Assembly: GCF_026571515.1 (NCBI RefSeq)
Contig: NW_026852108.1
Coordinates: 1 to 64,000, forward strand
Source: Ruditapes philippinarum
Lineage: Eukaryota
Direction: 5' to 3'
DNA length: 64,000 nt
Made by a program: the position numbers and the translations under genes. Each line of letters opens with the position of its first letter. The stretch's first letter is position 1. The notes under the pieces were generated by a model, which was given only the letters and a program-made list of their open reading frames with translations, was not told the origin of the DNA and ran no database searches. Of the stretch, positions 1,763 to 51,700 are shown piece after piece.

Positions 1763-2863
1763 TTACGGCCGAGTAATGTCATTTCTGTCATTGAGGTTAG
1801 TATTACTAGCGAGTAGGTCCTCCGAGGAATTTTGATACTGGCTGCAACAGAATAACACATTCTGGCAAGTTTCCAGGTTTATGAATCCATACAAAAACGG
1901 GTTAACACATGGATTGATATATGCTATAATCAAAGTCCAAGTGAGTACATATGATGGTAAACTGTTGTTTCTGTAAGAAACGTCATGGTGTAACATTCCC
2001 AAAACTACAAACAGCGGCAGCCACATGATGACAAACACCAGCACTAGTAGAATAAGTGTCTTCACCATTTTTATATCCTTGTTTCTTCTTGCAATTGCCA
2101 CTCTTTGGCTCCTTGTCTGAATATGGCATAAAGCACCAACTGCTTTCTTTGAGGACCAAAATTTCCGGAATATTTGATAGTAGTTAAAGGTGATCACAGT
2201 CATTGGCATGAAGAAGGCAAACAATACCAACATTGCCATAAAGAACGCGGAATAATGAATTCTTCCTCGTGGCCATAGCAACGAGCATATTGTTGCCATT
2301 TCTTCACCAACTTCTATGTCTTTGAGGTGAAAGAAAAGAGCTAATGGGAGGAAACAACATGCACTGACAATCCAAATACATAAGCAAATCAAAACAACAT
2401 GGCCTGTTCGTATTCTATTCACCATCCCTTTGTTGATGCAAAGGTACCTGTCCACGCTAATCACCGCCATTGTCCAAATCATTGCAATGGCGCACACAAA
2501 CATCCCATAAGTCAACAGATGACACATACCGTCTCCAAGACGCCACGTGCCTGTGATTCTGACGTAAGCAACAAATGGTGCAGCTGTAGCGAACAAAATG
2601 TCGCCAATGGCAAGATTGCATACAAAGTAGTTGGTTATGGTTCTCGAACTTCTTGTCTTGAACATAATCCCAAGAATGAAGAAGTTTCCGATAACAGACA
2701 TTACGAACAATGTTGTCATGATTGTTGCCTCAATATAAGCAGCCCCTTTCCAGGGTCTGTTAAACTCACTAAAATATGTAAAATATGTTACGTTCCCAAG
2801 TCCAAACATGGTATCCGTGGCAATGAAATAAGATCTGTTAGCTTGAGAGCCACCTGTCACCAT
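1763..2863 (-). CDS. FFAR4: Class A GPCR, free fatty acid receptor 4 (GPR120)-like, 366 aa, intronless (paralog 1)
   Basis: ATG at 2863 (the ORF-track start at 2869 is TTG). Seven hydrophobic segments; GN (TM1), NLAIGD (TM2), DRY, WLP (TM6), NPFLY (TM7). YVRITGTWRLGDGMCHLLTY, FTYFSE and ICSLLWP match human FFAR4 as recalled (AVRWTEAWLLGPVACHLLFY, FPFFSD, ICTLIWP). The GPCR call is certain; FFAR4 orthology is less so. Confidence 0.88.
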   Translation of the reverse strand: MVTGGSQANRSYFIATDTMFGLGNVTYFTYFSEFNRPWKGAAYIEATIMTTLFVMSVIGNFFILGIMFKTRSSRTITNYFVCNLAIGDILFATAAPFVAYVRITGTWRLGDGMCHLLTYGMFVCAIAMIWTMAVISVDRYLCINKGMVNRIRTGHVVLICLCIWIVSACCFLPLALFFHLKDIEVGEEMATICSLLWPRGRIHYSAFFMAMLVLFAFFMPMTVITFNYYQIFRKFWSSKKAVGALCHIQTRSQRVAIARRNKDIKMVKTLILLVLVFVIMWLPLFVVLGMLHHDVSYRNNSLPSYVLTWTLIIAYINPCVNPFLYGFINLETCQNVLFCCSQYQNSSEDLLASNTNLNDRNDITRP

Positions 2864-4212
2864 CTTCAAATGATAATTTGATCACTTGTAAAGTTAAATA
2901 ATAAAAACACAACCAAATTATGACTTATTTATTTGTAACTTGGTTAAAGCGATAATTCATTGGAAAAAAACCCATAAAGCAGATGTAACAGAATTTCCTA
3001 CAGGCGAGCTGAAATAATCAGTTATGATGTGTTTTGTCATTTGTCAACAACGGTTATTATTTATTGGAGGTATCAGGATTTCCGCCTTCTTCGTTGAAGA
3101 GTTCTGATAAAGAAACACTATCAGTAAATTAAAGATACCGTACAACCTCGAGCAATTTGATTAAATCTAAACTTTGTCATGACTGTTGCCTGAAATAAAG
3201 TGCGTGCATATTAAAATGATAAACAAAAGATAAAAAAAAAATGAGAACTCAATATTTACACCAGGACGATACAATATCTTAATTTCCATGAATATGAATT
3301 TGTTAAAATGGATGCACACCGGATACTCATTAATTATACTCCAAGTTCGATAATTTATTTTAAATTAACACATGTAAAACATGTAGGGAGTTGAGGTTGT
3401 AGCTTTCACAAGTTCCTTTCTCATAAAACAGAGTTCAAGTTCATATCGTATGCAACATGTAGTGCAATCCTGTACAATCTTATCGTTTTCGCTCCATTAC
3501 TCTGCGTTTCCTAGCGTTACCTAACGAAAGGTAATGGAGAGTCAATAAGGTTATGATTTATTTTGCTCGCCGCGTCCAGAGGATGATACTCTGAGATTTG
3601 GCTAGTACGTGAAATCCGACGGCGACGTCGATATCAACTTACGTTTCTTAGAGATAATGACGTATGACTTCTGGAAAACTAGTATGCCAATCCTGCTCTG
3701 GAACATTGACCTTTGAGGAATTTTTCGAGCGACTCTAGTAAAAAACATTTTGGATCCACGCCTGTACGGTACAAGTATTACAAAACAAAATGAGAATAAC
3801 AACCGTGTTTTAAATAGACACATTGTGGCGCCGTTATATGTCGCAATGCCGCTTAATGTCGTACTTACCGCTAAATGTCGCAACCGCCGCTAAATGTCGC
3901 AAATCGTCTGCCGTTAAATGTCGCAATGGTAACGTCAAATGTCGCACGATTTTCCCTTACCGTTAAATGTCGCAACACTACCGTTAAATGTCGCAAAATT
4001 TTAATTCATGTTAAACAAGTAGCTGGTGGTATTATGTTAATATAATTACCATTATGTATGTAATCTGGCGACAAATTATCTGTCATGTAGGAACTGCTTT
4101 GCTGTAGTATTTAAATAAATTGGTTGAAATGAAGTCATCTTAGTCGGTATTATAAATTGACGACCATAATTTATCCAAAAAGCCCCTTGGTGATTAAACA
4201 CATTTTTATTAC

Positions 4213-9590: not shown

Positions 9591-10670
9591 TCACATATAT
9601 GTTGCACTTGTTGGCTCCTCCTGTGGAAGAGCCATTGTTACAGCTGTGCTACGCTGTTTGTACCGTCGGCAGCACGCTATATTTCGGATAAATTCAGCGT
9701 TCATGAAACCATACAACACAGGGTTAATGCATGGATTGAGGTAAGCAATGATTAAAGCGCACGTTAAACCATACGACGGCATCTCGTTCCTACCGTTTTC
9801 TATATCTTCTCTTATCATGCTGAAAACAATGACGACCGGAAGCCACATGATGACGAAAATGACAACGAGCAAAACAAGTGACGTCACTACTCTGTGTTCC
9901 CGTTTTCTTCTTGTTTGTGTGCCACTGTTAGAAGCCGTCTGCGAAATTGTATCTATTGCTCTTTTTGAATTCAGGAACTTTTTGAATATGCAGAAGTAGT
10001 TAATTGATATTATTACAACCGGAAGTCCAAACCCGAGTACAAGTAACATCGTGGTAAACAGTACAGAATAGTGAATGTGTCCACTAGGCCATGTCAGAGT
10101 ACAGAATTTGTACTTTGTACCATTTTGATCAATCTCTTGAATATGAAAGAAAAACGCCGTAGGTAGAAAACAACATGATGTTGTAAGCCAGATACCAGCG
10201 CAGATATAGAATATGTGTACTGGTGCCAGGCGTCTGGAAGAAGATACATTTTTAACAATACAGACGTATCTGTCAATACTTATTGCAACCATTGTCCAGA
10301 TCATTGTATTAGAACAGACAAACATCCCATAATTCAGTAAGTGGCACATTCCGTCCCCTAGGTACCACGAGCCAGTGAGTCTGACGTAAGCAACTAATGG
10401 CGCCGAAGATACAAATAATATATCGCCAATGGCAAGATTGCACACAAAATAATTGGTAACTGTTCTGGCTTTTCTAGATTTGAAGATAACTCCAAGAATG
10501 ATGATGTTTTCAAACACTGACACGAAACATAAAATAATCATAGTAATAGCCTCTAAATAAGCAGCTCCTTTCCATGATCGGTTAAATTCGCTGAAATAAG
10601 TGAAATAAATGGTGCTATTATCCGAGCCATAGAAGAATGACCTGTTTATCTGAGATGTACCGTATACCAT
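9591..10670 (-). CDS. FFAR4: Class A GPCR, FFAR4-like, 359 aa, intronless (paralog 2)
   Basis: Colinear paralog of 1763..2863 (YFTYFSEFNR, NYFVCNLAIGDILF, YVRLTGSWYLGDGMCHLL, DRY, IMWLP, NPVLY). Confidence 0.88.
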   Translation of the reverse strand: MVYGTSQINRSFFYGSDNSTIYFTYFSEFNRSWKGAAYLEAITMIILCFVSVFENIIILGVIFKSRKARTVTNYFVCNLAIGDILFVSSAPLVAYVRLTGSWYLGDGMCHLLNYGMFVCSNTMIWTMVAISIDRYVCIVKNVSSSRRLAPVHIFYICAGIWLTTSCCFLPTAFFFHIQEIDQNGTKYKFCTLTWPSGHIHYSVLFTTMLLVLGFGLPVVIISINYFCIFKKFLNSKRAIDTISQTASNSGTQTRRKREHRVVTSLVLLVVIFVIMWLPVVIVFSMIREDIENGRNEMPSYGLTCALIIAYLNPCINPVLYGFMNAEFIRNIACCRRYKQRSTAVTMALPQEEPTSATYM

Positions 10671-17611: not shown

Positions 17612-18097
17612 TCAATGATGTTGAAGATATGCAACGTTGTTATGGTGGTCCCAACAACGATGAAGGCCATCGCATGTCACGATCGAAAGACGGGCGTAAT
17701 TATGTGAATGTGGGTCCGCTTTCAGTTCGAGTTCGTGCTGATGCCCGTTATTTTCTGTAGTGTACACCCTAATAGTGTGCCCATGCTTCAAGCCGTCTAG
17801 TTCCTCCTTTGTTAAGAAGATATCATGATTGTGGGCTCCTGGGGGATTTGAGTGGGTTGTTGACGTAGCATAATGAATGTCCTCATGAATGTTCAGATCC
17901 TTGATTTGTGGCTTGTGTTCGAACATTTTCTGATATTTATGCATGTCCATCATCATGTCCTCCATTGCAGCTAGATTCTTCCAGGTTGCACTGCCTTCTT
18001 GGTGTGTAGGGGCTATTGGGTATCTAATACGAATTTTTCCGACACCTGGAATTTCGGGGGAAAATATACGGATACCGGATGCAGTTACACGACGGAC
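17612..18097 (-). CDS. Secreted protein A, coding exon 2 (161 aa, His-rich C-terminal module)
   Basis: VRRVTASGIRIFSPEIPGVGKIRIRYPIAP...HNH...GHQH...CDGLHRCWDHH matches exon 2 of the paralog. Confidence 0.9.
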   Translation of the reverse strand, partial: VRRVTASGIRIFSPEIPGVGKIRIRYPIAPTHQEGSATWKNLAAMEDMMMDMHKYQKMFEHKPQIKDLNIHEDIHYATSTTHSNPPGAHNHDIFLTKEELDGLKHGHTIRVYTTENNGHQHELELKADPHSHNYARLSIVTCDGLHRCWDHHNNVAYLQHH

Positions 18098-19943
18098 CTG
18101 TAAATAAAGACGGACGTTAGTCGTGTTTTCCCATTAGTCTACCGAAACGCCAAGAATGTTAAAAAAAAACATACAAAAATGGCACGATACAAGATGCAGA
18201 ACACAAAAGAAAAGGTGGCGGTATTTAAAAGATTACATGTGTGCAATGGTAAACATAAGCTCTTATGGATATGGAACTCTATAAAAACTGATTCTATTAC
18301 GTCATTTTTAAATAATTGTATAATACCTCTCCATGTTGATCTAGGACACCAACAATATCCTTTGCAGTATCTGCTGGATCTCTATTTGCCTCACCACCAT
18401 GGAAAAACTCGGCCGGTGTCAGGTAGTAGCTCTGTAAGGATGAACCATTAAATGCCTTCGCTTTGTCCAGACCTCCGTCTCGTCCACCATCAGTTACATA
18501 ATGGAATGTTCTGTAATCTCTGTCTAGAAGCCGAAGGTTGTATGGATTCCAACTACTGAGTGGTGTCAACCAGACTATTTCAAGTGGTACGGCATATGTT
18601 GTTCTTGCCTCATGATATTTGCACTCCATCTTATGTGTCTTTGAATTACGTTCACAATCTTTGACGTTGAAATTTGCGATTTTTGGGTTCTTCGTTTGAG
18701 CAACCCATAGAGAGGTATCAGAGTATCCTCTGTTGCGTACACTCAGACCCATAGCACCCTTTCTCATTACTCTGTAATGACGATGGTATCGAGCAGTGTT
18801 CAAAACGGTTGCATTTTTCATATCAATTCTGTATTTAAGAAGCCCAAATGAATCATCTGTTTGATGGCCGGGATAGTTGTCAACACCTGGAATTTCATTC
18901 ATGATAGAGTCCATTGTACCATAAGTATAACGACGGTCAGAATATGTTCCAAACCCATCATCAGCGTGATAGCCATTTCCTCTTGATGGGGCCACAGTGA
19001 ATCGAACTTGTTTGCCTTTTCTTGTATAATCACTATAGTTGTAATTTGGCATCCATGCCATTCTTGCTGCTAAATCATCGACTGGTTTCAGGTCCTTCAA
19101 CTCCAGATCACGCTTGATTGGATGGCATAAGATTCTGTAGTTCCACTGTGCGTAAATAGGCTCGCCGTGTTCTGTTACGTTTATAATTGTTGTCGGTAGG
19201 TATGAAAGATTTTCGAATTGGTTTTTGCCACCTGTGGATGACATATACTGAATCTTTTGTTGTAGGTCAAACCAACTGGATGCGTCAATGAAATGTCTGT
19301 CGCTCTGGAAAGGTTCGTCAAGGTGTTTCGTGTCTGTAGTCCAGCCGCCTTCTAGATAACACAGTACTGGTTTGAAATATGGTTTGTAATTTCTCAGTTT
19401 AGTATTTTGATCACGGAAAGCTTTGAAATACTGTTGCATTTCTGCAACTTGCTCTGGGATAGTTTTCTTGTTGCGAACAGTTGGTGGAACATCGGGAAAT
19501 GGAATATCCTCCATTGCATGGTAATCTGATTTTGTTCGGTGGGGCATTCTGAGCTTGTAGTCGTTATGTCTGGTTCGGAATTCGACTCCGTTCAATACTC
19601 CAATAAATTCACCCATGCCGACAGTTCGGTCATAGTTCGAGTGCTCATGGATAGCGAGAAACGAGTGGCTCGAATACGTATCGTAGTGATAAGGTCTTGA
19701 CCCGCCGCCATTGCTTCGAATTTGCTTGACACCGGAACTACCATCTGAGCGTACTCTCTCTTCTACAAACAGTTGCTGAAGCATCATTTGTCTCGCCAGA
19801 CCGCCGATTGTTTGTTTTACGGACGTTTCAAATTGTTTGAACTGCGCCTGCAGCTGATGGAGAAGTTGCACGTCATTACTGGTTGCGCCATGTACAACAT
19901 ACAACAACGGGCACAGGAACAGAAAAGATAACGTCAGTCGCAT
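17612..19943 (-). CDS. Uncharacterised secreted protein A, 700 aa; join of 18327..19943 and 17612..18097 (minus)
   Basis: ATG at 19943, 2 nt after a TTTTCAG acceptor; signal peptide MRLTLSFLFLCPLLYVVHG. Donor GAG|GTATTA at 18327/18326, acceptor TTTACAG|GTC at 18098/18097, phase 0. AATAAA at 17568-17573 (minus). Colinear with the paralog at 24745..27741. Confidence 0.9.
18327..19943 (-). CDS. Secreted protein A, coding exon 1 (539 codons)
   Basis: Long ORF; homology with the paralog ends at VGVLDQHGE, at the GT donor. Confidence 0.9.
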
Positions 19944-20898
19944 CTCTGAAAATTGCAAGATATACATTGAAACAGCTCGTAACAAAATTTAATAAATTTA
20001 ATAAATTTCAACAAAGAAGATCAATTTTGATATTAAAGAAATTCATGCAATTACATCTGGCCGTACTTAATAATAATAGTGCAGAAGATGTACATTTTAA
20101 AGTTCACAAAAGGGGATATGAAAGTAAAATGCATGCTTGAGTTATTGACCTTAGCCAATAACTAACAACCATGACCCCCTAGAACGTGTATACAAAACCA
20201 AGCATGTTCAGTGGTTGACATGTTTAACCATATAAATCATTAGATTTGTACATTTAGGTTATATTGTCGAGTTGATTTTCTCCGCATGTATGGGATTTGT
20301 TTCTTATCACTGGCCAATGAAAACAGAAAGCGCGCGAAAAGTAATTCTTTATTTGGGAAGAAAGAATATATGGCTTGATAAAGTTGCAACGGATAAAAAC
20401 ATTTGTGAATGCACAGAACGCTTTCAAACATTGAAATGGGTGTTGGTGACAATTTGTATTGAAAAATATTTTTTAACTGAAATTATATTTGTAGTTTAAA
20501 GTGTAATGCTTTTGGTATATATAGATTGTTTATGATTTTTCATTCTGAACCACCTTCCCACTCTCAGAGATTGATATATTTTATATATTATTTTATTTAT
20601 AAAATATATATATCTAACCGATTTCTTAGGTCATGTGACACTGATCTGACCTGGTTTTGATTTTGTGTGTAGATCTAATTACGACATTACAAATATCACA
20701 AAAACATTTGCATCAATTATACATTTTTGCAAAAACTACCGTTGCTCACGGAAGTATTATTGCCCCAATTGCCACTCATATAACTTGTCCAGTAGTCTCG
20801 TCAAAAAGAAAAAAAAATATGTATCGGCTATTTACCGTATTTACGTGCACTCACTGAGCTATAGCACGAAAAGTGTACTGCATTATATATAAAATCTG

Positions 20899-21873
20899 TT
20901 TAGTGTCCAGCTTTATTTGTCATCCAATGAAAGCGCTGTATTTCTTAAAAATTATGTGTGTTAATTTTCATAGAAGAAAAAAAGTCGATACTATATTGAA
21001 ATCCGTTCATAGTCGCCTTCTATTTTTCATAGTGCTTCATAGAACCGCGTAGTGACGTTATCAAGGGCCAAATAAAGCTTGACACTAAATAATTATGTTG
21101 GTGTTCATCCTTAGCTGTTCTACAGAAATTAAAAACATTCTCCTGTCGCTATCGCTCCCGTTGAAGTTTCTAATTTCTGTAGAACAGCACGGATGAACAC
21201 TAACATATACATAAAGATATCTTTATATACATTTAGTGTCCAGCTTTATTTGTCATCCAATGAAAACGCTGTATTTCTTAAAAATTATGTGTGTTAATTT
21301 TCATAGAAGAAAAAAAGTCAATACTATATTGAAATCCGTTCATAGTCGCCTTCTATTTTTCATAGTGCTTCATAGAACCGCGTAGTGACGTTATCAAGGG
21401 CCAAATAAAGCTTGACACTAAATAATTATGTTGGTGTTCATCCTTAGCTGTTCTACAGAAATTAAAAACATTCTCCTGTCGCTATCGCTCCCGTTGAAGT
21501 TTCTAATTTCTGTAGAACAGCACGGATGAACACTAACATATACATAAAGATATCTTTATATACATTTAGTGTCCAGCTTTATTTGTCATCCAATGAAAAC
21601 GCTGTATTTCTTAAAAATTATGTGTGCTAATTTTCATAGAAGTAAAAAAGTCGATACTATATTGAAATCCGTTCATAGTCGCCTTCTATGTTTCATAGTG
21701 CTCCATAGTACCGCGTAGTGACGTAATCAAGGGCCAAATAAAGCTTGACACTAAATATGTTAGTGTTCATCCTTAGCTGTTCTACAGAAATTAGAAAACA
21801 TTCTCCTGTCGCTATCGCTCCCGTCGAAGTTTCTAATTTCTGTAGAACAGCACGGATGAACACTAACATATAC
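20899..21873. repeat. Tandem array of three 333-bp units, each made of two hairpins
   Basis: TTTAGTGTCCAGCTTTATTTG starts at 20899, 21232 and 21565. Each unit has IR pairs TTTAGTGTC..GCTTTATTT/AAATAAAGC..GACACTAAA and GTGTTCATCC..GCTGTTCTACAGAAATTA/TAATTTCTGTAGAACAGC..GGATGAACAC. Confidence 0.95.
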
Positions 21874-24744
21874 TTAATATACGTACCTTTATGCAGTTAG
21901 GCTTAAATTTTGATATTATTAAGATATACACTCCAATGGTCACTGTGTGATTACACGATGGACACAAATAATATTTCCCCCTTAATCTCTTACTCATGAA
22001 ATGAGATCGACGTGTACTTCGAAAGTACCATTAGATAGATGTACCTGAATTTGAATACGAAACCCATACAAATGATGAAAATGGAAAATCTGAAACATAA
22101 AAGACTATACTGTTTCAGATTTTTCAGTTTTCATTACACATCTGTTTATATGGGTTTTGTATTCAATTGTGTTTTATGAAATGAGTATGTTGTTTGGATA
22201 TATAGGTACAATGTATATTGAAAGTTTTCTTTGTTAACTGTGGTACTTCCGGGAAAAGACATATTGCTCAAGAAGAGAAACAAAAGAGAAACGATTGGCA
22301 TTTCGTTGTCCCAGATAAATTATGATACAGTCACTTAAGACTAGATAATTGATAAATTAGTAAGCGGGCAAAAATTTATTCAATGAGTAACGGTGATTTC
22401 TTACAAAAAGTGCACCAAACCTTGATTTTTGTACGTATATTATGTCAGACTTACATGTATATCAATACATAATCAAACCCAGGCCAAACATGTGTCATAA
22501 AAGCTGAGAAATCGAATTGTCTCTTATTTTTGGTCATTTTTACGATGCTTTTATGACTCATATATTTAGTCCGATTATGTGATAGGCAAAATTACATTAA
22601 TAATTATTTTAATTATTCAAATGGTAGAGTACATCTTAAAATTCTGGAAAAGAAGATCTATATGCAAGAATGAAAATAAGTAGAATTGAAGTTTAATATT
22701 TCTGTACGAATCCTCCAATATTTATATAATCAAATAATTGATCATAAAAAAATCAAAATTAATAATCTGAACTTTTATATTTTGTTTGAATGTAAAAAGA
22801 AAATAAATATTTTACCTGCAACTTTGTACGAAGCCTGCTTTTTCGCAATTGACAGATACTTCTTTCTCGCGTTGCTACCGGCAGAGGAGCAACTGGTAAA
22901 TGTGGCCACCAGGTCGCCTATCTCTCACGATTGTACCAACAAAGATATCTGACCTTATAGTTCCATTTAAAGGAACACGGGCTTATCTTAGTAGTTCATT
23001 ACATTATTCAATATTTTGAATATATTTAGCATGTATTCGTATCCGAAATTGTTACACTTTTGCAGCAAAATTCGACCGACCGAATGGTTACTTTCACATT
23101 CACTTAATAGCCTTTTGGGTCAATGTGTGAAACCGTACTTTGTCAATTTATTTTCATGTGAAAATATCAGTACATTTACTAGAGTTTTGATCAATTATAC
23201 TAGTTTATCAAAATTAACTTATTTCAACACATTTCATGCCTGTAATTTTAATATTTTCTGATTACTCATATATTAATGTACCTATCTCAATATAAAAAAA
23301 TAACGTGCTGAAAGTTCTGTATACAATCAGGTTTCCGATTATATATTTTTGAAATAATTCTGGATAACCCCTTGAAACGTTGGAGTTTGAAAAATTTTTG
23401 GAATAGATAATTATATATTTTTGGTATTTACAAAAAAAAAATGCTTTATATGAATGAAATATCACCAGAACCATATGATTAAGCTAGATATATATGAAGC
23501 TCTAATGAAAAATGTTTTCCCATGGAGTAGCTTCTAATGAACTATTTCAAGTGTGTTTTAGTTTGAGTTGGGGTTGACCTCAGTAATACCAAGATTGTAA
23601 ATTTGAAATTGTTTCATAAACCTAATTCTTTATGTGACCTTAAGTTTGTATGTCCTCAATTTTTCCCCTTGAGATAAAGAAATACATGTACAAAGCAATA
23701 AGATAGTTCATGTCTACAACTGAAAGATAAGACGGTGTTGAATTGTTTAGACCATAGCTGTCCGGACTTGTATTAGGGCGTCAGGTAGACAATTATCTTT
23801 TTAATAAATGATTTTTTGTTTCCGTAATTAAGATGTTTAAAACATTTTTTTTCAGGACTTTCAGCATTCGTTATTATTTTTTTTGCCATCAACACATGCT
23901 ATACTTATATATTATAAAGAAATAATAAGTATCTGTAATTCATCAGTTAACTTTATCATATATTCTTGATGTATTTTATTATGTGTAAGTTTAATGTCTG
24001 CTCATAAACTTGAATGAGCAATCCTCAAATTTATGAAAATAGTGAGCCATATGAAAAAGCATTTTTTATTCTAAAATTTGCAAAGCCACATTTTCATAAA
24101 GAATTCAGTAGCTTATTTATACCTGTTTTTCTTAAGATATCCGAATATTTTGTTTCATTATCACCCTTTTTTCTTATTAACTATATCATATTTGAAAAGT
24201 TAACGTTCTAGAATATGATTCTTAACCGTCGCTTTCGAACGCAGTTGAGTATCAGTTTATATTTTAAGTGTTATAATATAATTATGTTTGAAGAAATATT
24301 ATTCATTAACATGTAATAAAGAATACAGATATCAACGAGGCAAAGGCTACGTTCACAGAATGCAGAATTAAACTAGCAATGACATTTTCCTACCATTTAA
24401 TTTTACAATGAGCAAGAGATTTTTGATTGATAAAATTGCTTTTTTATTTGAAAAATATCCATATCCCACATTTAATTCAGAATCAGTCGTCAAATTACAG
24501 AACTGTCAGAATGTAGTCATCATTATGCTTACAAGTGCAGTCCGCCTTGTAGTTTGCCTTCCTTTTAATTATTATTATCTTATATAACCTTCTACTATAG
24601 ACATAAAAAGCCATAATGGTAGCTCCATTTGAATATCAAATTCTTAAGGAAAAATATGCATGATTATAATAATTTGTAAATATACAATTTGTTATATTTG
24701 TATAAATACAAAATCTGTTAGATGATGATTTTCTATTTTTAGCC

Positions 24745-26364
24745 ATGCGAGTGACGTTTTGGTTATTGGCTTTGTGCCAAATTCTCTTCTTTACAAATGG
24801 CGCAAATACGGCTTCCACAACTGACACTTTTTCCAAACAAGTGCACGACTTCCAGACAGAACTTCAACAGTTTACGTCTTCTGTAAAAACGAGTATAAGT
24901 CGTCTTGCTAGACAAATGATGCTTCAGCAAATGCAAGTGGAAGAGAAAATCCGTGCAGACGGAAGCTCGGGTATCAAACAAATCCGAAACAACGGTGGCG
25001 GATCGAGGCCCTATCACTTTAATACATTCATGTCGCCTGGATCATTTTGTTCCATGCACGAGCATTCCAATTACGACAGAACTGTAGGCTTAGGTGAGTT
25101 TATAGCCGTGTTAAATGGTGTGGAATTCCGTACAAGACATAACGATTATAAACTCAGAATGCCATCTACTAAGACCAAGAATTATCACGTAATGGAAAAT
25201 ATTCCATTTCCGGAGGTCCCACCTTCAGTCCGCAGCAAGCAAAATATCCATGAACAGATTGTTGAGATGCAACAATACTTTAAGGCTTTCAAAGAGCAGG
25301 ACAGCACGATTAGAAATTACGAACCGTATTTCAAACCGACCCTTTGTTATGTGGAGGGCGCTTGGACGACTGATACTCGTCATCTTGACGAACCATTTGA
25401 GAGCGACAGACATTTCATAGATGCATCGAGTTGGTTTGACTTGCAACAAAAGATCCAGTATATGTCTTCAACAGGCGGAAAGAACAACAATGAAAATCTG
25501 TCATACCTTCCAACCGCTATCATCAATGTTACTGCCGATGGCTCGCCTGTTTATGCACAGTGGAATTATAGAATCGTGTGCCATCCGATAAAGAAAAAAC
25601 TGAAACTTGAAGATTTTAAGCCTATCGATGACTTGAATACACATATAGATAATATTCGCAGAAACTTCACTCAGTTGACAACATATAGTAAAAGCTTAAG
25701 ATATAACTTAGCGCCAGAACACGGGTCCAACTACAGTAACCTAACAGGTTCGGGAACATTTGAAGATGGTCACTTTTACTACAATATCATGGATCAACTG
25801 ATGTACGAAATTCCAGGTGTTGATAATTACCCAGGACATTTAAGTGACGATACCTTTGGCGAGCTTAAACACAGAGTGGATACCAACACTCCAACAGTAT
25901 TAAATACCGCTCGTTATCATCGTCACTATAAGATACTTCCAAAGGGCGACAAGGGACTTTCAATGCAAAACAGAGGTTATTCAGACTCTACGCTCTGGGT
26001 TGCGCAAACTACAAACCCAAAGATTGCCGAAATGGAAGCCAAGGATTGCCACGTTGACGTGCATACGCAAAAGCCTGTATGTAGAACATACAAGACCCGG
26101 TCGACATATGCAATTCCTCTTGAGATTGTCTGGCTCACCCCGCTCAGTGCATGGAATCCGTATAACTTAGCAATTCACAAAGACTACAATGCTGTTACTG
26201 CCAATGGTAGAAATGGGGGAAACGATACAGCACATGCTTTTAATGGATCGTCTTTACGTAACTACTATCTAACACCGGCTGAATTCTTTCACGGCGTAGA
26301 AGAAGACCGAGATCCCGCCGATACCGCCAAAGATTCTGTAGGTGTGTTAGATCAGCACGGAAAG
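24745..26364 (+). CDS. Secreted protein B, coding exon 1 (540 codons)
   Basis: Long ORF colinear with exon 1 of protein A, ending VGVLDQHGK. Confidence 0.9.
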
Positions 26365-27741
26365 GTATATCTTAATACATGTATATACAGGTCCCGACAA
26401 ACGTTATTTTTCTAAATTTATAACGTGTTTGTGATAGGCAGAATTTAGAAAATATCATTTTGATATGAAGGTCATCAAAGCAAAATTGTTCTAAACAAAA
26501 TCGCATTTCCATATACTTCCGTTTCTTATTAAGTAGAACAAATGCAAAACGAAACATTTGTTTAGTCTGTACAATGTCAAATGTCTGATGTGCGGTGAAA
26601 TAGCCTACATTATTAACCCAATTAATTTATGCATTATTTTATCTGTCCAAGTCTCTCTTTGGGAAATATCAACAGATATCAATTTTGAGTCCGTTGTTGT
26701 AGAATAATGCACGGTTCGAGTACAGATGCGGAGTCATGTATAATCACGAAGGCTGGTGGGTCGTACATAGCATTTGAACAATGAACCATGCATGATTGTA
26801 CTACAAAGGAAATTGATATGGATTTCCAATCTTCCATGCCTATGAAGAATTCATAAAAAATATTTTGAACTGCATTTAGCGGAGAAGTAATTTTCGTCGT
26901 CGTTGGTTTATTGACGTCAAATATGGCGTCATATTGCGTTTAAACAGTCTTTCTCTTGATCAGTGCATATATCATGTAATAAGACACGCGATTGCTCAGT
27001 CTGTTTGATAAGAAAAACATGTGAACCGTGTTAGAATCTTTGCCAAATCAAATATTTTAGTGATTGATGTAATGATATTGTAGTGACGTAAAAATAATTC
27101 AACAAATTCCTTTTAAAACTTATTATAAGAATTTTGAATCATCAAACATCCCGCTCTAGATGCGATCTTTCTGAGGTTTTGTTTTAGAGTATTAAGCCAA
27201 AAAAGACCGATATTTCGGAATATATAATACACTTTTGTAATTTTTATAGGTGCAGAGAGTTTCTGCCTCCGGCATACGTATTTTTACACCGAAAATAAGC
27301 GGTGTTGGCAAAATAAGACTTAGGTACCCGGTTGCTCCGGCTCACCAAGAGGGAGACGTAACTTGGAAAAATCTCATTGCATTGCAAGACGTTCTGATGG
27401 ATACCATGAAATTTGCTCAGATGTTTGAGCAGAAGCCCGCTACGATGGATCCACTTGCGCATGCGCCCGATACCATCTACCTAATGACGACGACGCACAA
27501 TAATCCACCCGGAATGCATAACCATGAGGTGTATATCACACGTGAAGAAATGATCGCTCTTGAACGAATTGGGACCATGGTTGAAGTCTATACCTCGGAA
27601 AGTAATGGACATCATCATCAGCTTACATTGACTATGGATCCACAACATAGTGATCTCAGCACTTTAAAAGTAGTTGACTGTGACGGAAAATCAACATGCT
27701 GGGACGGCCATAGCATGACCGTTACAAAGAAGAAAGTGTGA
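24745..27741 (+). CDS. Uncharacterised secreted protein B, 703 aa; join of 24745..26364 and 27250..27741
   Basis: ATG 2 nt after a TTTTTAG acceptor; signal peptide MRVTFWLLALCQILFFTNG. Donor AAG|GTATAT at 26364/26365, acceptor TTTATAG|GTG at 27249/27250. Same phase-0 intron position as protein A. Confidence 0.9.
27250..27741 (+). CDS. Secreted protein B, coding exon 2 (163 aa, His-rich C-terminal module)
   Basis: VQRVSASGIRIFTPKISGVGKIRLRYPVAP...HNH...GHHH...CDGKSTCWDGH. Confidence 0.9.
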   Translation: MQRVSASGIRIFTPKISGVGKIRLRYPVAPAHQEGDVTWKNLIALQDVLMDTMKFAQMFEQKPATMDPLAHAPDTIYLMTTTHNNPPGMHNHEVYITREEMIALERIGTMVEVYTSESNGHHHQLTLTMDPQHSDLSTLKVVDCDGKSTCWDGHSMTVTKKKV

Positions 27742-39700: not shown

Positions 39701-42700
39701 CTTAAGTTTGAAGCTTTTACTACAACTGTAATGGCTAATTGTGTTTACATATATTTGGGATTTATACCCCAACATGAACGTTATAACAGGGTTGCAGAGT
39801 TTTCCCCCAAATTTAAACATGCCACACTTTTTTCCCAATCGCAAACAAAGAGATTTTTTTTTTTTCATTTCAGAAGATGATGGGCTTGGCGAGGCAGACA
39901 GCTTTGTTGGTCAATCACCCCCTCAACCAGTAGGTGTTCCACCAACCTCAACAGTGTTAAAAAGTAACTCTGTCCCACAGATTGGTCCTGGAACCCCAGT
40001 TAGACCTCAGGCTAGTCGACCACCCCAAAACATGATGCCACCACTGGCACCCACTTCACAGGTTCCTTCATCAGGAAGCACCATGTCTACGGTTCCACCT
40101 ATGCCTAATGCAAGTGGTAAGTCATAAAACTACAAGTATCAGTGTCAACCAGGGCTTTTTTTCCTTCTATAGCAGGGCCGTTATAGGGCTGCTTCCCCAA
40201 AGAAAAATTCTTTTTTTCCCCAAAAACTGAATTTACATCAAGCCTTTTCTTCCCCTTTTGCAAATATATCGTGTAATTTTTCCCCAAAATTAAACCTAGG
40301 GCTGCTTCCCCAACCTGAGAAAAAAAGCCCTGTCAACTATACGTGTATTTGAATCAAATTAGATTATTAATCATGTGGCAAACCAAAGAATGTTTTTCAA
40401 ATCATGTTATCCAAATAAAAACTTGTAAAATCATGAAAACAAAATTAAGATGTTCGTTTAGTGACAGATTTACCGGTAATTAACATGGATTATGATGGCA
40501 TATTAAGAGTGGGTAGAGGTTACAGAAAATTGAATAACATTATCAAAACTAACGGGTTACCATATTGAACCAATATAAGGGTCATCTAGAGCTGTCATCG
40601 ATATCAACAATATCGATGTATCGTTGATATTTTTTTGTCGATCAATAATCGATACACATTTTAAAAAATCGATACTTTTGACTAATAAATTAAATGTCTA
40701 GAAATTATAAAATTCACCAAAAATATATACAGAAGCAGTAATTTATATCTAATGTTATGCTTTTGTTATATAGTGGAATTATTTCATAGCAATGGTGACA
40801 AAAATATTGTCTGGAAAAAATCATGCAGTGGACAAGACACTGTACAGAACATGTTTTTGACTGAAATCATTGAAACAGGTATGAAAGTGAATGACAGACA
40901 AGTGAGTATAGGATATTATCGATATATCGGTGTATCGTTGATTTTAGTCACTTGATATCGATATATCGTTGATATGCTTTGCACTGAATCAATGACAGCT
41001 CTAGGGTCATCTAATGTAGGTAAACTAATATCAATAGTTGTTTAATGAAATCAATGGATTACGACAATTGTAAGAATAAGTTTGCTTGTGATGATAATTG
41101 CAACTTGTATGAACTCTAAATAAAACACATTTACCATACAAGTGTGTAGAGGAGCAGCAATTACAATGGGAGCTAGAATGCATAGATTCCTACATGACCC
41201 TAATCGGTTTTATTTAAATTTGTATTATCAGATTAGTGGATAATAATAAGAATTTCACCACAAAATATTTCTTAACAAAAGAACACATGTCAATTTTTTG
41301 GGTTAAATCTATTGTTATTCAAATAAAAGGTCAGAGTAGGAATCTATCAATTAGGATAAATGCAATACACATACATTTTATTATATTGATGCAACAGATA
41401 CTTTATTGTGTTTCAGGTTTATCAAGTTTGTATCGCAAGCATGGCTCTAGCAGATATGCTCCAATGCCATCTGGGACATACTCCACCAACTCACCAGCCA
41501 ATTTGATGTCAAATCCCCCAGCTCCCACACCTTTCTCACAAAATTTCACAGAAGCTGCCATGCTTGAACCGTCATCGTCCACACCTAATATTCCTCCAGC
41601 GACGCTACCCCCTCAGCCAAGTATTGGTCAACTACCTGGCATGGGATATGTTGCTAATGCTACAGGTTTGCAATTTAATGATAATATTAATTTTAACTGA
41701 TCATTGAATAAAGATATTGATAGTCGATGGCAGTATAAACCTTATGGTTCCTAAATAACTTTCAATGTGAAGATGGTGCCTTCCAGGATGTATAGAGTAC
41801 AAAAATTGATTTTAAGTATGCTGTTTTCTGTTTCAATATTATAATAAATATTAATGTCATTACAATTTTATATGTAAAACTATGTAGAGCTGTAATGGAT
41901 CAGTTGAGGGAGAATAAATGAGCCGCGTCACGACAAAACCAACATAATGGGTTTGCAGTCTGATCAGGATCCATGCTGTTCGCTTACCAACTTTATTACA
42001 AGTAGAGAAACTGATAGCGAACAGCATGGATCCTGATCAGACTGCGCAGATGCAAACCCATTATGTTGGTTTTGTCGTGACGCGGCTCAAATAAAAAAAA
42101 TCAATCACTCATGAACATCAATAGAGAAGAATGTTCCCCAACAATCTATTCAACTGCTAGTCTTTAGTTAGACTTTAAAAAAAAATAGGGAGAGCTATTG
42201 CACTTGATCCGGGTTAAACATTAGTTTTTGCTTGTAAGTTTGTATTTCTGGAACTACTAAAGAGAATGGGTTGAAACTTCACACACTTATTTGAGAGCAT
42301 TATAGGCTACTGTCCTAGGCCCATAACTCTTAACATGGATAATGACAGTCACACAATTATTATAGCCCTTTTTGAAATTAGAAAATTCTACATTATCCAG
42401 GCCCACGTTTACTGTATCAAGCATTGAGAATAGTTAAGCTGTAATAAGCACACTGTCTTACTGACAGATCTTGTTGTAAGGCCTTCAAAGATATGCACTT
42501 GCCTGCTTTCTCTGTATGATACAAACATTATTCCTCCAATGTAGAATTTTATTACATTCTTCTGACTACAGACAAGCTTGATTACTTGAAACATTTAAAA
42601 AGATAGGTAGTGTCTAGATATTGTATAGGAACTATACTGGAATTGCTGTGTTTACTTATTCAGGTACATATATCCCAGTAGCCCATCACTGGTGCTTTTG

Positions 42701-48700: not shown

Positions 48701-51700
48701 TTTTATACGGAAAGTGAACAAGACTAATTTGTATAGTGGTAGAAAACAAACTTCTCAAACCTAATTTTTGTATAAGCAATTTTGATGTTATTTATCCTTG
48801 TAAAACCACATAGCATAATGAATTATATTGTTGCATTGCAATTTAATACTATAAAAAAGGAGTATGGTTCATACACCATACAACTTTAAATTGGAACCAG
48901 TAGTTCTTTTATATAAAACACTAGAAATAAAGTGAAAATCATTTGTTATTCTGGGTTTATGTATTTAATATAGGCTGAGGGGTGGCCTAGTGGTTGTGGT
49001 GCCTGCCTACCAAGTTCAAACCCAACCCAACGATTGCGGGTTTAAACCCATGGATAACGGGTTCAAACCCAAGGATTGCAGGTTCAAACCAAGGGGTTCC
49101 GGGTTCAAACCCAGGGATTGCGGTTTCATTCCCTATTTGGTTCCGAACATTTTTCATTATATGACACTAGTATTGTTTAGTTCCTGGAAGCCGACTAACA
49201 CATGTTTGTAATAAGAATTGAATTAGTTGCACACTTATTTGTAAATATAAATGTTTAATCTAATACAGGGTGAACAGATGCGTCCACGTGTTGTGAAGAG
49301 GGGAGTTGAAGATTTTGAATCAGTAGACGAGGGGGAGTCAAGACAGGTGGATCATCTAGTGTTTGTTGTACATGGTATTGGTAGTACATGTGACTTCAGG
49401 TTCAGAAGTATTGTAGAATGTGGTACGTTATATTTATTTTAACAGAAAATTTAAATGTTCTTTTTCCCCCAAAAAAGGGTAGTTATTAAGTTATTTCAAA
49501 ACACATGAAGAAAAGTTACTTTAAGTTACTTGTTCAATACTGTTAAGTTTTATAAGGTCAGAAAGGATATACATGCAATTAAGTTAATTGGAGTTATCAT
49601 AATGCATGGATGGGTAGGCTGGCCTGGCTTTATACAAGTGACAAAGGCTACCAATCTAGCAGGTTATTAAGATTGATGGTTGTTTGCAGGTGCTTTCCAG
49701 GTTCTAAAATATTGCACTAAGGGAGAGGTCTTGATCTACCAGTAAAGCTGGAAAGTTTTCATTTAAATTTCACTGTGTCACTGTAACTTTAAAGCGAGAC
49801 AATAAAGTTTTTGAAAATGTCCATATGGATTTAAATTTCAATATTGGCAACATCATGATATAAGATTTAACATTTGTTTTTCAGTTGATGATTTCCGATC
49901 AATATCTAAAAGTTTGTTGTCTAGTCATTTTACACAGTATGTAGATAGCAATAGAATAGGTCGTGTCGAGTTTCTACCTATACACTGGCATACAGCACTA
50001 CACGGTGATGCTACAGGAATTGACAAGTAAGCAAGAATTCTGTTTTATTAATGAAGTCCAGTGAGAGTTTGCCCTTACCTTATACCACTTATTTAAGTTT
50101 GGTCATTAAAAATATATGGGAGTGTTAGTTATCCCACTCAACCTGCCATCACTGTTGATGGTAGTGTAATGCTTGTTTAGGGTTTTGCATGCAATTTAAT
50201 ATCTCATTAACATATGAAAATAATCAGTTGAAACTGATCACATTTTACTTTGGTCACTAAATGACACTAGTTACTCTGCAGAGGGTTTTTATACAAAATT
50301 ATCCCCCTGTATTGAACTTCTCTATGGCTAGAATACTGTTTCATTCTCAAGCACTGATAGTTATTGAGCACTCTTTCGATGTAAAAGGTTTCGTTTATAA
50401 AAAAGTTTTTGGGTTATGAAATGCTTAAATATTCTTTATCACACAATATATTGAACAATAAAATGTTGAATGTCATTTTCAAGTTTATCAAGCAGTAATA
50501 TTAAATATGTGAGGGATATTTGCTTGTTTTCATTTAATATGATATATATTTCACTGAGAAGTGAGAAAATTGCTAAAATTTCACCAGCTTGTGGATATTT
50601 TCTCAAAAACAAAAAAGTTTGGCAAAGCTTTATCACATGTTATTGATACACAGTTAGTATTATGAATTTCAGACCTAACTTAATTAATCATATTAAGAAA
50701 AATTATAATGTTTACATACATGTATGTACATTTTCAACAAAATATGTCATGCAAAATACACAAAGTGTATACAAGGTATGTTATTATGTCTCCCCCACCT
50801 CGGGGGGAGACATATTGTTTTTGCCCTGTCCGTCCGTCAGTCCGTCCGTCTGTCCGTCCGTCCATTCTTCGTTTCCGGACGATAACTAGAGTTCCTTTTG
50901 ACCTACAGCTCTCAAACTTCATAGGATGAATGGTCTTATTGAGCAGATGATCCCTATTGTTTTTGGCGTCAGTAGTTCAAAGGTCAAGGTCACAGTGACC
51001 GTTGGTCAATTTCTCGTTTCCGGATGATAACTAGAGTTCCTTTTGACCTACAGCCCTCAAACTTCATAGGATGATTGGTCTTATAGAGCTGATAATCCCT
51101 ATTGTTTTTGGGGTCAGTAGGTCAAAGGTCAAGGTCACACTGACCGTTGGTCAATTTCTCGTTTCCGGATGATAACTAGAGTTCCTTTAGACCTACAGAC
51201 CTCAAACTTCATAGGATGATTGGTCTTATTGAGCAGATGATCCCTATTGTTTTTGGGGTCAGTAGTTCAAAGGTCAAGGTCACAGTGACCGTTGGTCAAT
51301 TTCTCGTTTCCGGATGATAACTAGAGTTCCTTTTGACCTACAGCCCTCAAACTTCATAGGATGATTGGTCTTATAGAGCAGATGATCCCTATTGTTTTTG
51401 GGGTCAGTAGGTCAAAGGTCAAGGTCACAGTGACCGTTGGTCAATTTCTCATTTCCGGATGATAACTAGAGTTCCTTTTGACCTACAACCCTCAAACTTC
51501 ATAGGATGATTGGTCTTATTAATCAAATGATCCCTATTGTTTTAATGGTCAGTAGGTCAAAGGTCAAGGTCACAGCGACCGTTGGTTAATTTCTCCTTTC
51601 CGGATGATAACTAGAGTTCCTTTAGACCTACAACCCTCAAACTTCATAGGATGATTGGTCTTATTGAGCAGATGATCCCTCTTGTTTATGGGGTCCTATA

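What the first reader, a model, noticed from the sequence alone, without database searches (positions are those of the whole stretch)
17612..27741. Head-to-head pair of ~700-aa secreted proteins of unknown function: candidate co-regulated extracellular metalloprotein system
Seen: two divergently transcribed paralogs with ATGs 4.8 kb apart and identical gene structure (acceptor 2 nt before the ATG, one phase-0 intron after VGVLDQHG[E/K]). Both have a signal peptide, a heptad-rich segment (LARQMMLQQ..VEE..R) and long invariant blocks with potential catalytic or metal ligands (HEHSNYDRTVG.GEFI.VLNGVEFRTRHNDY; SDRHFIDASSW; LNTARYHRHY; PLEIVWLTPL; RDPADTAKD). In the 28-codon block SDRH...GGKN all residues are identical while 10 codons differ silently, so both copies are old and under purifying selection. 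I recognise no characterised domain. Inference: an oligomeric, possibly heteromeric A/B secreted enzyme or scaffold (haemolymph, mucus, shell or egg) driven from a shared bidirectional region.
Basis: partly seen in the sequence, partly recalled or inferred. Interest (0 to 1): 0.82.

Follow-up and report, generated by a model that had tools for sequence, protein, structure and literature searches.

The report
Phage-fibre-like secreted protein gene pair
Two back-to-back clam genes encode secreted, histidine-rich 700-residue proteins of a large unnamed animal and protist family whose main domain is clearly related to the outer part of bacteriophage tail fibres, a link I did not find in the literature I searched.

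Summary
Two divergent two-coding-exon genes, A (17612-19943, minus) and B (24745-27741, plus), encode 700- and 703-residue paralogs. They are 62% identical in exon 1 and 44% in exon 2. Silent sites are saturated and replacement changes are constrained.

Pfam, NCBIfam, PHROGs and PDB sequence searches name nothing. The family is nevertheless very large: 1599 clusters at 50% identity. Named members come from molluscs, a brachiopod, an annelid, cnidarians and Diplonema. A 2021 preprint noted the same domain in a choanoflagellate collagen (ChCL) as similar to 'metazoan proteins of unknown function'.

The new result is that the ~520-residue core is homologous to the distal module of P2-type phage tail fibres:
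- Gene B against a Pseudomonas-type prophage fibre gives pairwise BLASTP E 1e-66.
- Foldseek against Bacillus phage G gp431 gives E 4e-35.
- 42 IMG/VR viral loci encode the core.

The C-terminal His module recurs as an insert inside Pseudoalteromonas fibres. The core model (pLDDT 90.6) matches no solved fold.

My reading is a secreted, probably trimeric, metal-binding protein that binds or processes surface glycans. The biochemistry is untested. The scan flagged only this same stretch before.

The parts
18327..19943 (-). Gene A, coding exon 1 (539 aa). It holds the signal-peptide-like N-terminus (about 19884-19943), the heptad helix (about 19746-19874) and most of the core domain (18327-19742).
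   Evidence: ORF and translation. It is 86% identical over residues 1-539 of Mercenaria LOC123546767. BLASTP against the L033 prophage tail fibre gives E 1e-58.
18098..18326 (-). Gene A intron, 229 nt, GT..AG, phase 0, after the residues VLDQHGE.
   Evidence: Sequence read. The flanking exons are contiguous on the Mercenaria orthologue.
17612..18097 (-). Gene A, coding exon 2 (161 aa plus stop). It holds the end of the core (about 17978-18097), a linker, and the C-terminal His/Cys module (17615-17875).
   Evidence: The first 35 residues align to fibre residues 650-683 of L033.
19944..24744 (.). Intergenic region between the two ATGs. An AG acceptor lies 2 nt before each ATG (19946-19947 on the minus strand, 24741-24742 on the plus strand). 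A 333-bp unit is repeated three times at 20899-21864.
   Evidence: Promoters and 5' exons were not mapped.
24745..26364 (+). Gene B, coding exon 1 (540 aa). It holds the signal-peptide-like N-terminus (24745-24804), the heptad helix (24829-24960) and most of the core domain (24961-26364). Invariant residues include H105, H107, E118, R131, H132, D134, S220, R222, H223, D414, E460 and W470-N471-P472.
   Evidence: The AF2 model of residues 76-540 has pLDDT 90.6 and pTM 0.90. BLASTP against the L033 tail fibre gives 32% identity over 486 aa, E 1.3e-66. tblastn against phage G gp431 gives E 1e-24.
26365..27249 (+). Gene B intron, 885 nt, GT..AG, phase 0, at the same codon position as in gene A.
   Evidence: Sequence read. 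The exons are contiguous on Mercenaria LOC123546768.
27250..27741 (+). Gene B, coding exon 2 (163 aa plus stop). It holds the end of the core (27250-27369), a linker, and the C-terminal His/Cys module (27466-27738). The module has two HxH motifs, a final His and a Cys pair.
   Evidence: The module is homologous to an insert in Pseudoalteromonas tail fibres: hhalign probability 96.9%, E 2e-10, and a eukaryote-only HMM finds the insert.

Best explanation
A and B are lineage-specific (venerid clam) inverted duplicates of one gene. That gene belongs to a large, unnamed, extracellular eukaryotic protein family.

Each protein has four parts in order:
- a signal peptide;
- a ~45-residue coiled-coil neck;
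- a ~520-residue beta-rich head;
- a ~95-residue His/Cys module.

The head is homologous to the distal module of P2-type bacteriophage tail fibres, which is shown here. In other lineages the same head hangs on other rod-like parts: the phage fibre shaft, or a collagen repeat in a ChCL-like protein.

From this I infer that the clam proteins are secreted oligomers, most likely trimers. I further infer that the head, helped by histidine-bound metal ions, binds (and possibly cleaves) a conserved extracellular glycan or microbial surface polymer. On this reading they work like a collectin-style or fibre-style recognition protein.

Both copies are kept by purifying selection and are probably both transcribed. 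Nothing shows that they act as a pair.
For: Shown:
- Gene models and paralogy.
- Family size and range: 629 word-search hits, and 1599 clusters at 50% identity with E<=1e-3. Named members come from bivalves, gastropods, Lingula, Owenia, anthozoans, hydrozoans and Diplonema.
- Homology to phage fibres:
  - Four Pseudoalteromonas genomes carry the core in a 1014-1136-aa ORF placed after Baseplate_J, Tail_P2_I and a tail-fibre N-terminal gene.
  - 42 IMG/VR loci encode the core.
  - In L033 one 735-aa ORF joins PF12571 (tail-collar fibre N-terminus, E 3e-51) to the core. It lies between Tail_P2_I and the sheath gene.
  - NCBI names such proteins 'phage tail protein'.
  - Gene B against that fibre gives E 1.3e-66. 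The match continues from exon 1 into exon 2.
  - Foldseek on the Mercenaria orthologue model gives gp431 at E 4e-35, TM 0.60.
- About 40 positions, mostly polar (3 His, 5 Arg, 2 Asp, 3 Glu, 4 Asn and others), are invariant or nearly so in both 40 eukaryotic and 14 phage sequences.
- The His module travels with the core in two different positions.
- Rod-like partners: phage shaft, Pfam Collagen in P0169, ChCL in the preprint 10.1101/2021.10.08.463732, and the heptad helix here.
- Fusions to EGF, ShK, a plastocyanin-like domain and a membrane anchor point to an extracellular setting.
- Fourteen small, probably RNA-derived assemblies from six studies hold 0.35-0.42 of the sampled words of the 10-kb stretch. 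That is about the exonic share of both genes together.

From published knowledge: HxH motifs in trimeric phage fibres bind Fe on the three-fold axis (PMC6116203).
Against: - No experiment or solved structure exists for any member, phage or eukaryotic. The ligand, the metal and the oligomer state are all inferred.
- Receptor-binding tips of phage fibres usually vary fast. This head is conserved at 45-50% identity between cnidarians and clams, with many invariant polar residues, which fits an enzyme or a structural metal site at least as well as a lectin.
- In two phage loci (L026, L032) a coiled coil and a further ~200-aa domain follow the core, so the core is not always the distal tip.
- The trimer test on the helix gave no answer.
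- The AF2 monomer folds confidently on its own, so an intertwined trimer is not required.
- Expression rests on word shares in runs whose RNA status is mostly guessed.
Confidence: 0.5

Rival explanations
1. The head is a metal-dependent extracellular enzyme, for example a polysaccharide depolymerase, another hydrolase or an oxidase, like the enzymatic domains carried by many phage tail spikes and fibres. The clam proteins would then digest or remodel an extracellular polymer from food, biofilm, mucus or matrix rather than merely bind it.
For: - Invariant H105, H107, H132, D134, R131, S220, R222, H223, E250, D414 and E460 are shared by phage and animal sequences at only about 30% overall identity.
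- Sequence conservation across animal phyla is very high.
- A protist member is fused to a plastocyanin-like copper domain.
- ChCL carries a ConA-like lectin/glucanase domain next to the core.
- The proteins are His-rich: 33-41 His per protein.
Against: - There is no similarity to any known catalytic fold or family.
- The phage proteins come from hosts as different as Bacillus, Pseudomonas and Pseudoalteromonas, so one common substrate is not obvious.
- I could not check whether the invariant residues cluster in space, because no coordinates were available.
Confidence: 0.3
2. One reading: A and B form an obligate A/B hetero-oligomer and are co-regulated from one shared bidirectional promoter.
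For: - The genes lie head to head and have the same structure.
- Both copies are retained in Mercenaria as neighbouring gene numbers on one chromosome-size record.
- Word shares in probable RNA assemblies fit both genes being present in the same samples.
Against: - Clustered paralogs are common in this family without fixed pairing. Examples are Mytilus, Lingula, Actinia and Oculina.
- Most species' members are not organised as A/B types, and the duplication is younger than the split from Mactra.
- The ATGs are 4.8 kb apart, with a tandem repeat between them.
- No interaction evidence exists (one search gave no answer).
- Transcription start sites are unknown.
Confidence: 0.12
3. The proteins are structural: a matrix, shell, mucus or egg-coat scaffold in which the phage-derived head serves only as an assembly knob and the His motifs as folding or cross-linking metal sites.
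For: - HxH metal sites in phage fibres are thought to aid trimer folding (PMC6116203).
- The head is linked to collagen and coiled coil in relatives.
- The sequence features are extracellular.
Against: - The family occurs in unicellular protists and in soft-bodied cnidarians, so a shell role cannot be general.
- The invariant polar constellation is larger than folding sites would need.
- I found no proteomic report.
Confidence: 0.08

Closest known systems
P2-type phage and tailocin tail-fibre proteins with a PF12571 N-terminus (NCBI 'phage tail protein' of Pseudomonas and Tistrella; the Pseudoalteromonas prophage ORFs), and Bacillus phage G gp431
   Same: The ~520-residue head is homologous along its whole length. 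Identity is 26-34%, with E 1e-24 to 1e-66 and Foldseek E 4e-35. The same invariant motifs are present: HxH, RTRHNDY, S-x-RH, WNP and ADT.
   Different: The clam proteins lack the phage N-terminal baseplate-attachment domain and shaft (no PF12571). Instead they have a signal peptide and a coiled coil, spliceosomal introns and a C-terminal His module. The function of the phage domain is itself uncharacterised.
ChCL, Choanoflagellate Collagenous Lectin (bioRxiv 10.1101/2021.10.08.463732)
   Same: Its ~700-aa non-collagenous domain was reported as similar to 'metazoan proteins of unknown function'. The top hit was Lingula XP_013383323.1, which is family member P0054 here, 47% identical to gene B. 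Both are extracellular, with a rod-forming segment N-terminal to the head.
   Different: ChCL is membrane-anchored and uses a collagen repeat. It ends in a ConA-like lectin/glucanase domain. The clam proteins are secreted, use a coiled coil and end in the His module. I did not hold the ChCL sequence itself. P0169 (Pfam Collagen plus core) has that architecture.
HxH iron sites of trimeric phage fibres and spikes (R1/R2 pyocin fibres, T4 gp37, P2 gpV; PMC6116203)
   Same: An invariant HxH lies just after the rod-like segment, and two more HxH motifs lie in the C-terminal module. The ancestry is phage fibre.
   Different: There the six histidines come from three chains around the fibre axis in a thin shaft. 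Here the motifs sit in globular domains that fold as monomers in AF2, so they may form intrachain sites instead. Metal binding is untested.
Collectins, ficolins and other 'defence collagens' (work-alike only)
   Same: Secreted, with an oligomerising neck (coiled coil or collagen) followed by a globular head. The gene families are clustered and duplicated in invertebrates.
   Different: There is no C-type lectin, fibrinogen or C1q domain. The head is five times larger and far more conserved than typical recognition domains.
YmaF family (PF12788)
   Same: The language-model and predicted-structure look-alike search for the C-terminal module listed YmaF clusters (score 0.85; TM 0.51 by query, 0.44 by target).
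   Different: All scores are below the tool's own trust level. The YmaF profile finds nothing in the exon or in the whole genome. This is a lead only.

Membership tests
Unnamed eukaryotic family (ChCL non-collagenous-domain-like; Lingula XP_013383323 group) | Full-length alignment with the family's invariant motifs | tested here: met
   Gene B is 45-85% identical over 91-100% of exon 1 to most of the 120 best-scoring members listed (a few fragment hits cover only 56-89%). In the 66-sequence alignment A1 there are 90 invariant columns, which both window proteins share in the exon-wise comparisons.
Unnamed eukaryotic family (ChCL non-collagenous-domain-like; Lingula XP_013383323 group) | Architecture: signal peptide, long helix, core, C-terminal HxH/HxH/Cys-pair module | tested here: met
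   The signal peptide was judged by eye only, because no predictor was available.
P2-type phage tail fibre (gpH position) | Distal core module | tested here: met
P2-type phage tail fibre (gpH position) | N-terminal tail-collar fibre domain PF12571 that docks on the baseplate | tested here: not met
   Neither window protein has a Pfam match. The phage relatives have PF12571.
P2-type phage tail fibre (gpH position) | Gene lies in a tail module (Baseplate_J, Tail_P2_I, sheath, chaperone) | tested here: not met
   The window locus is eukaryotic. It has GT..AG introns, rhodopsin-type GPCR genes and a retroelement fragment as neighbours, and orthologues in a Mercenaria chromosome-size record.
P2-type phage tail fibre (gpH position) | Homotrimer | tested here: inconclusive
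   Complex prediction on three copies of the helix gave no answer. Full-length trimers exceed the tool's size limit.
HxH axial Fe site of trimeric fibres | HxH motif present | tested here: met
   H105 and H107 are invariant in 40 eukaryotic and 14 phage sequences. Two further HxH motifs lie in the C-terminal module.
HxH axial Fe site of trimeric fibres | Six His from three chains bind one Fe on the three-fold axis | not testable with these tools
   This needs a trimer structure or metal analysis.
Pfam YmaF (PF12788), for the C-terminal module | Match to the family profile | tested here: not met
   There is no hit at E<=1 for either exon 2. There is none at E<=0.01 in the whole genome, while the Bacillus subtilis control rings.
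Counting factor associated protein D (a name carried by one oyster isoform, UniRef A0A8W8K7W7) | Cathepsin-like (papain family) domain. That CfaD is cathepsin-like is from my memory and was not confirmed in the papers I could read. | tested here: not met
   No peptidase family is matched by any of the 66 members. The named entry is only a 28-residue-shorter isoform of P0048. The CfaD sequence itself was not available.

The most novel reading that the evidence does not exclude
Before animals and choanoflagellates diverged, a eukaryote captured the distal module of a phage tail fibre. Animals, choanoflagellates and several protist lineages have since used this virus-invented head as a trimeric extracellular receptor for bacterial surface polymers. 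It is mounted on a coiled coil or collagen and carries histidine-bound metal. That would make it a previously unrecognised class of innate recognition protein with a fold that has no solved relative.
Probability: 0.2. Interest if true: 0.85.

Novelty: new variant of a known kind. Interest (0 to 1): 0.6.

Why it matters
A 700-residue extracellular protein family is conserved at 45-50% identity between cnidarians and molluscs, and is also present in choanoflagellate-type and other protist proteins. It has no Pfam model, no solved structure and no known function.

Showing that its head is the same module that P2-type phages and tailocins carry on their fibres gives the first handle on what it does. 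It suggests binding or cutting of cell-surface polymers, oligomeric display and metal sites. It also links animal extracellular biology to phage host-recognition machinery.

The link helps in the other direction too. The phage domain is equally uncharacterised, and the deep eukaryotic alignment marks the residues that matter. For clam biology, the pair is a candidate for microbe handling in mucus, gut or haemolymph.

Tried and rejected
Searches that found nothing:
- Pfam, NCBIfam and PHROGs on the four exon translations.
- Pfam on 66 family members: only sub-threshold noise.
- PDB by sequence and by profile.
- Foldseek against PDB with both models: nothing better than E 0.08.
- Papers searched by gene numbers and by phage-fibre/animal terms.

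Weak or unusable results:
- VIA-align on the full model was swamped by the long helix.
- VIA-align on the core alone reached at best Z 3.6. The weak top rows are mostly phage receptor-binding-protein and TssK 'shoulder' domains. That is suggestive only and far below the tool's trust level.
- ESM Atlas on the whole protein gave no usable hit. Its own model is poor, with pLDDT 0.31.
- A stand-alone search with exon 2 found only fragments of the same family.
- YmaF lead for the His module: not confirmed.
- The name 'Counting factor associated protein D' on one oyster entry looks like an automatic label.
- Complex prediction on three copies of the neck helix gave no answer. It counts neither for nor against binding.

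Ideas rejected:
- MSP130, another family with bacterial relatives in calcifying animals. I considered it from memory and from a paper title seen. I dropped it because nothing here matches, and I did not test it directly.
- Contamination or a prophage. Introns, eukaryotic neighbours and chromosome-level orthologues rule this out.

I sent those places to no search afterwards.

All searches were exon by exon, by reference. The full-length Mercenaria orthologue P0002 served as the proxy for folding.

Full report
**What is in the window**

Two long open frames face away from each other. Reading the DNA at their ends gives the same structure for both.
- Gene A (minus strand) has a 539-codon exon at 19943..18327. 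A 229-nt GT..AG intron in phase 0 follows, then a 161-codon exon at 18097..17612.
- Gene B (plus strand) has a 540-codon exon at 24745..26364, an 885-nt GT..AG intron at the same codon, and a 163-codon exon at 27250..27741.
- In both genes a pyrimidine tract and an AG end exactly 2 nt before the ATG. This fits an upstream non-coding exon.

The proteins are 62% identical in exon 1 and 44% in exon 2. Overall, silent sites are saturated (pS 0.82-0.87) while replacement sites are not (pN 0.23-0.34).

Each exon pair lies end to end on a Mercenaria RefSeq protein, with no residue missing or doubled at the junction. All searches were exon by exon, by reference. The Mercenaria orthologue P0002 served as the full-length proxy.

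**It is a real animal locus**

The neighbours are two intronless rhodopsin-type receptor genes and a retroelement endonuclease fragment. The genes have spliceosomal introns. Both have orthologues on a chromosome-size Mercenaria record. The same genome holds a third, multi-exon paralog on another contig.

**Expression**

- Fourteen small assemblies from six studies hold 0.35-0.42 of the sampled words of the 10-kb stretch. One is on record as RNA-Seq; the rest are guessed to be RNA.
- That share is about what the exons of both genes together make up. DNA-sized runs hold 0.52-0.55.
- This suggests that both genes are transcribed in the same samples, but it is indirect.
Junctions, start sites and co-expression therefore stay untested. 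I sent those places to no search afterwards.

**No curated family, but a very large one**

Pfam, NCBIfam, PHROGs and PDB sequences give nothing. Yet the word search finds 629 relatives, and the exhaustive profile search finds 1599 clusters at 50% identity, 591 of them below 1e-30.

Named members are all 'uncharacterized'. They come from:
- bivalves;
- gastropods (Gigantopelta, Batillaria, Physella, Biomphalaria);
- Lingula;
- the annelid Owenia;
- anthozoans and hydrozoans;
- Diplonema papillatum and a EukProt entry.

I saw no deuterostome or ecdysozoan among the named hits. That is not proof of absence.

Longer members add extracellular parts:
- EGF;
- ShK;
- a plastocyanin-like copper domain with a membrane anchor;
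- in P0169, a Pfam collagen repeat in front of the core.

**The literature**

One preprint had met this domain (10.1101/2021.10.08.463732). It describes the choanoflagellate 'ChCL' as a membrane anchor, a ~50-aa collagen, a ~700-aa non-collagenous domain 'similar to metazoan proteins of unknown function', and a ConA-like lectin/glucanase domain. Its top hit, Lingula XP_013383323.1, is family member P0054 here. I found no paper linking the family to phages.

**The turn: the core is a phage tail-fibre module**

- Bacterial genomes. A scan of bacterial genomes with the family's two most conserved peptides found four Pseudoalteromonas genomes. There the core is the C-terminal half of a 1014-1136-aa ORF. 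That ORF sits behind Baseplate_J, Tail_P2_I and a tail-fibre N-terminal gene, and before a tail assembly chaperone.
- Viral contigs. The same scan of IMG/VR gave 42 viral loci. They share a recurrent P2-like gene order. In L033 a single 735-aa protein joins the 'phage tail-collar fibre N-terminal' domain (PF12571, E 3e-51) to the core. It lies between Tail_P2_I and the sheath gene, which is the gpH tail-fibre position.
- Names. NCBI calls such Pseudomonas and Tistrella proteins 'phage tail protein'.
- Cultured phages. Among 50,697 cultured phage records only Bacillus phage G has the core, as gp431. That gene lies near an XkdX gene, and its N-terminus matches PHROG 'tail protein' families.

The homology is strong by every measure:

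| Comparison | Result |
|---|---|
| Gene B exon 1 against the L033 fibre (pairwise BLASTP) | 32% identity over 486 aa, E 1.3e-66; the match runs on into the first 35 residues of exon 2 |
| Gene B exon 1 against phage G gp431 (tblastn) | E 1e-24 |
| L033 fibre core against cnidarian and mollusc proteins, in a 5.8-billion-sequence database | E 1e-54 to 1e-64 |
| AF2 model of the Mercenaria orthologue against BFVD (Foldseek) | gp431 at E 4e-35, TM 0.60 |

About 40 positions, mostly polar, are invariant or nearly so in both 40 eukaryotic and 14 phage sequences. In gene B numbering they include R81, H105, H107, E118, R131, H132, D134, S220, R222, H223, E250, N251, R276, D414, E460, W470-N471-P472 and D526.

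**The His module**

The C-terminal ~95 residues hold two HxH motifs, a last His and a Cys pair. The Pseudoalteromonas-type fibres carry a 73-residue insert inside the core with the same pattern.
- hhalign gives 96.9% probability, E 2e-10.
- Phage G and the Pseudomonas-type fibres lack it.

A small module that has joined the same core twice, at different places, most likely works with it.

A look-alike search pointed to YmaF clusters at scores below trust. The YmaF profile does not match.

**Fold**

- The full-length orthologue model has pLDDT 84 and pTM 0.75. It shows a signal helix, a 44-residue helix, a beta-rich core and a small C-terminal sandwich.
- The model of the window's own gene B core (residues 76-540) has pLDDT 90.6 and pTM 0.90.
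- Neither model matches a solved structure. Foldseek gives nothing better than E 0.08. VIA-align gives at best Z 3.6.
- The weak top rows are shoulder domains of phage receptor-binding proteins and TssK. That is thematically apt but not significant.

**Evolution**

In a 51-row tree, all eukaryotic rows and all phage or bacterial rows are separated by one branch (support 100). Metazoans form one clade (support 100).

A groups with Mercenaria LOC123546767 and B with LOC123546768. The duplication therefore arose after the split from Mactra and before the split of this clam from Mercenaria. B has the longer branch.

The tree is unrooted, so the direction of the old transfer between phages and eukaryotes is open. 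Labelling the unnamed metagenomic rows as eukaryotic is my inference from their domains.

**How it most likely works**

Shown: the head is a phage-fibre module, the protein has secretory and coiled-coil features, and both copies are constrained.

Inferred:
- Oligomeric, probably trimeric, display. The head's partners elsewhere are a phage shaft, a collagen repeat or a coiled coil.
- Metal binding by the invariant histidines. HxH motifs bind axial iron in trimeric fibres (PMC6116203), though here they may form intrachain sites.
- Binding, or cleavage, of a conserved extracellular polymer such as a microbial surface glycan.

The main rival is a true enzyme. The unusually conserved polar constellation favours that reading. 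The two readings are not far apart and need the same experiments.

The only oligomer job gave no answer.

**Verdict**

The gene pair itself is an ordinary lineage-specific duplication. The family it belongs to is remarkable for its size, its conservation and its complete lack of annotation. Its kinship with phage tail fibres appears to be new.

Noticed in passing
window 1763-2869 (-) and 9591-10670 (-): Two intronless paralogous rhodopsin-family receptor ORFs of 368 and 359 aa (Pfam 7tm_1, E about 1e-53), lying upstream of gene A's 3' side.
   Followed up: partly
window 20899-21864: A 333-bp unit repeated three times (99% and 73% identity to the first copy) in the intergenic region between the two genes. 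It could be a satellite, a transposon remnant or a regulatory array.
   Followed up: no
I sent these places to no search afterwards.
   Followed up: no
window 51682-52191 (+): ORF fragment with an endonuclease/reverse-transcriptase-type endonuclease domain (Exo_endo_phos_2, E 8e-6). It is probably a LINE-like retroelement remnant.
   Followed up: partly
window 39741-40127, 41236-41700, 62971-63363 (+): Proline/glutamine-rich ORFs with no Pfam match. They may be exons of one or two low-complexity genes.
   Followed up: no
G000:C15579:401105-406916 (-) (loci L003-L005): A third family member in the same genome, split into several short exons. One exon carries the RTRHNDY motif. This contrasts with the two intron-poor genes of the window.
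   Followed up: partly
L033:9638-10465 and L008:6801-7754: The ORF just downstream of the fibre gene shares a weak N-terminal motif between Pseudomonas-type and Pseudoalteromonas-type loci (E 7e-4). From memory, the motif resembles the start of right-handed beta-helix proteins. It may be a second fibre or spike protein, or an assembly factor that travels with the core.
   Followed up: partly
L026 and L032 (fibre ORFs): In these two viral loci the core is followed by a predicted coiled coil and a further ~200-aa domain, so the core is internal to the fibre there.
   Followed up: partly
P0332 (1011 aa): A PF12571 tail-fibre protein carrying the core also has a short Gly-X-Y collagen-like run (residues 151-177). 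This parallels the collagen-plus-core architecture of the eukaryotic P0169 and ChCL.
   Followed up: partly
P0276 versus P0048 (Magallana gigas): An oyster isoform lacks a 28-residue segment spanning the end of the core. This implies exon borders there that differ from the clam intron position.
   Followed up: partly
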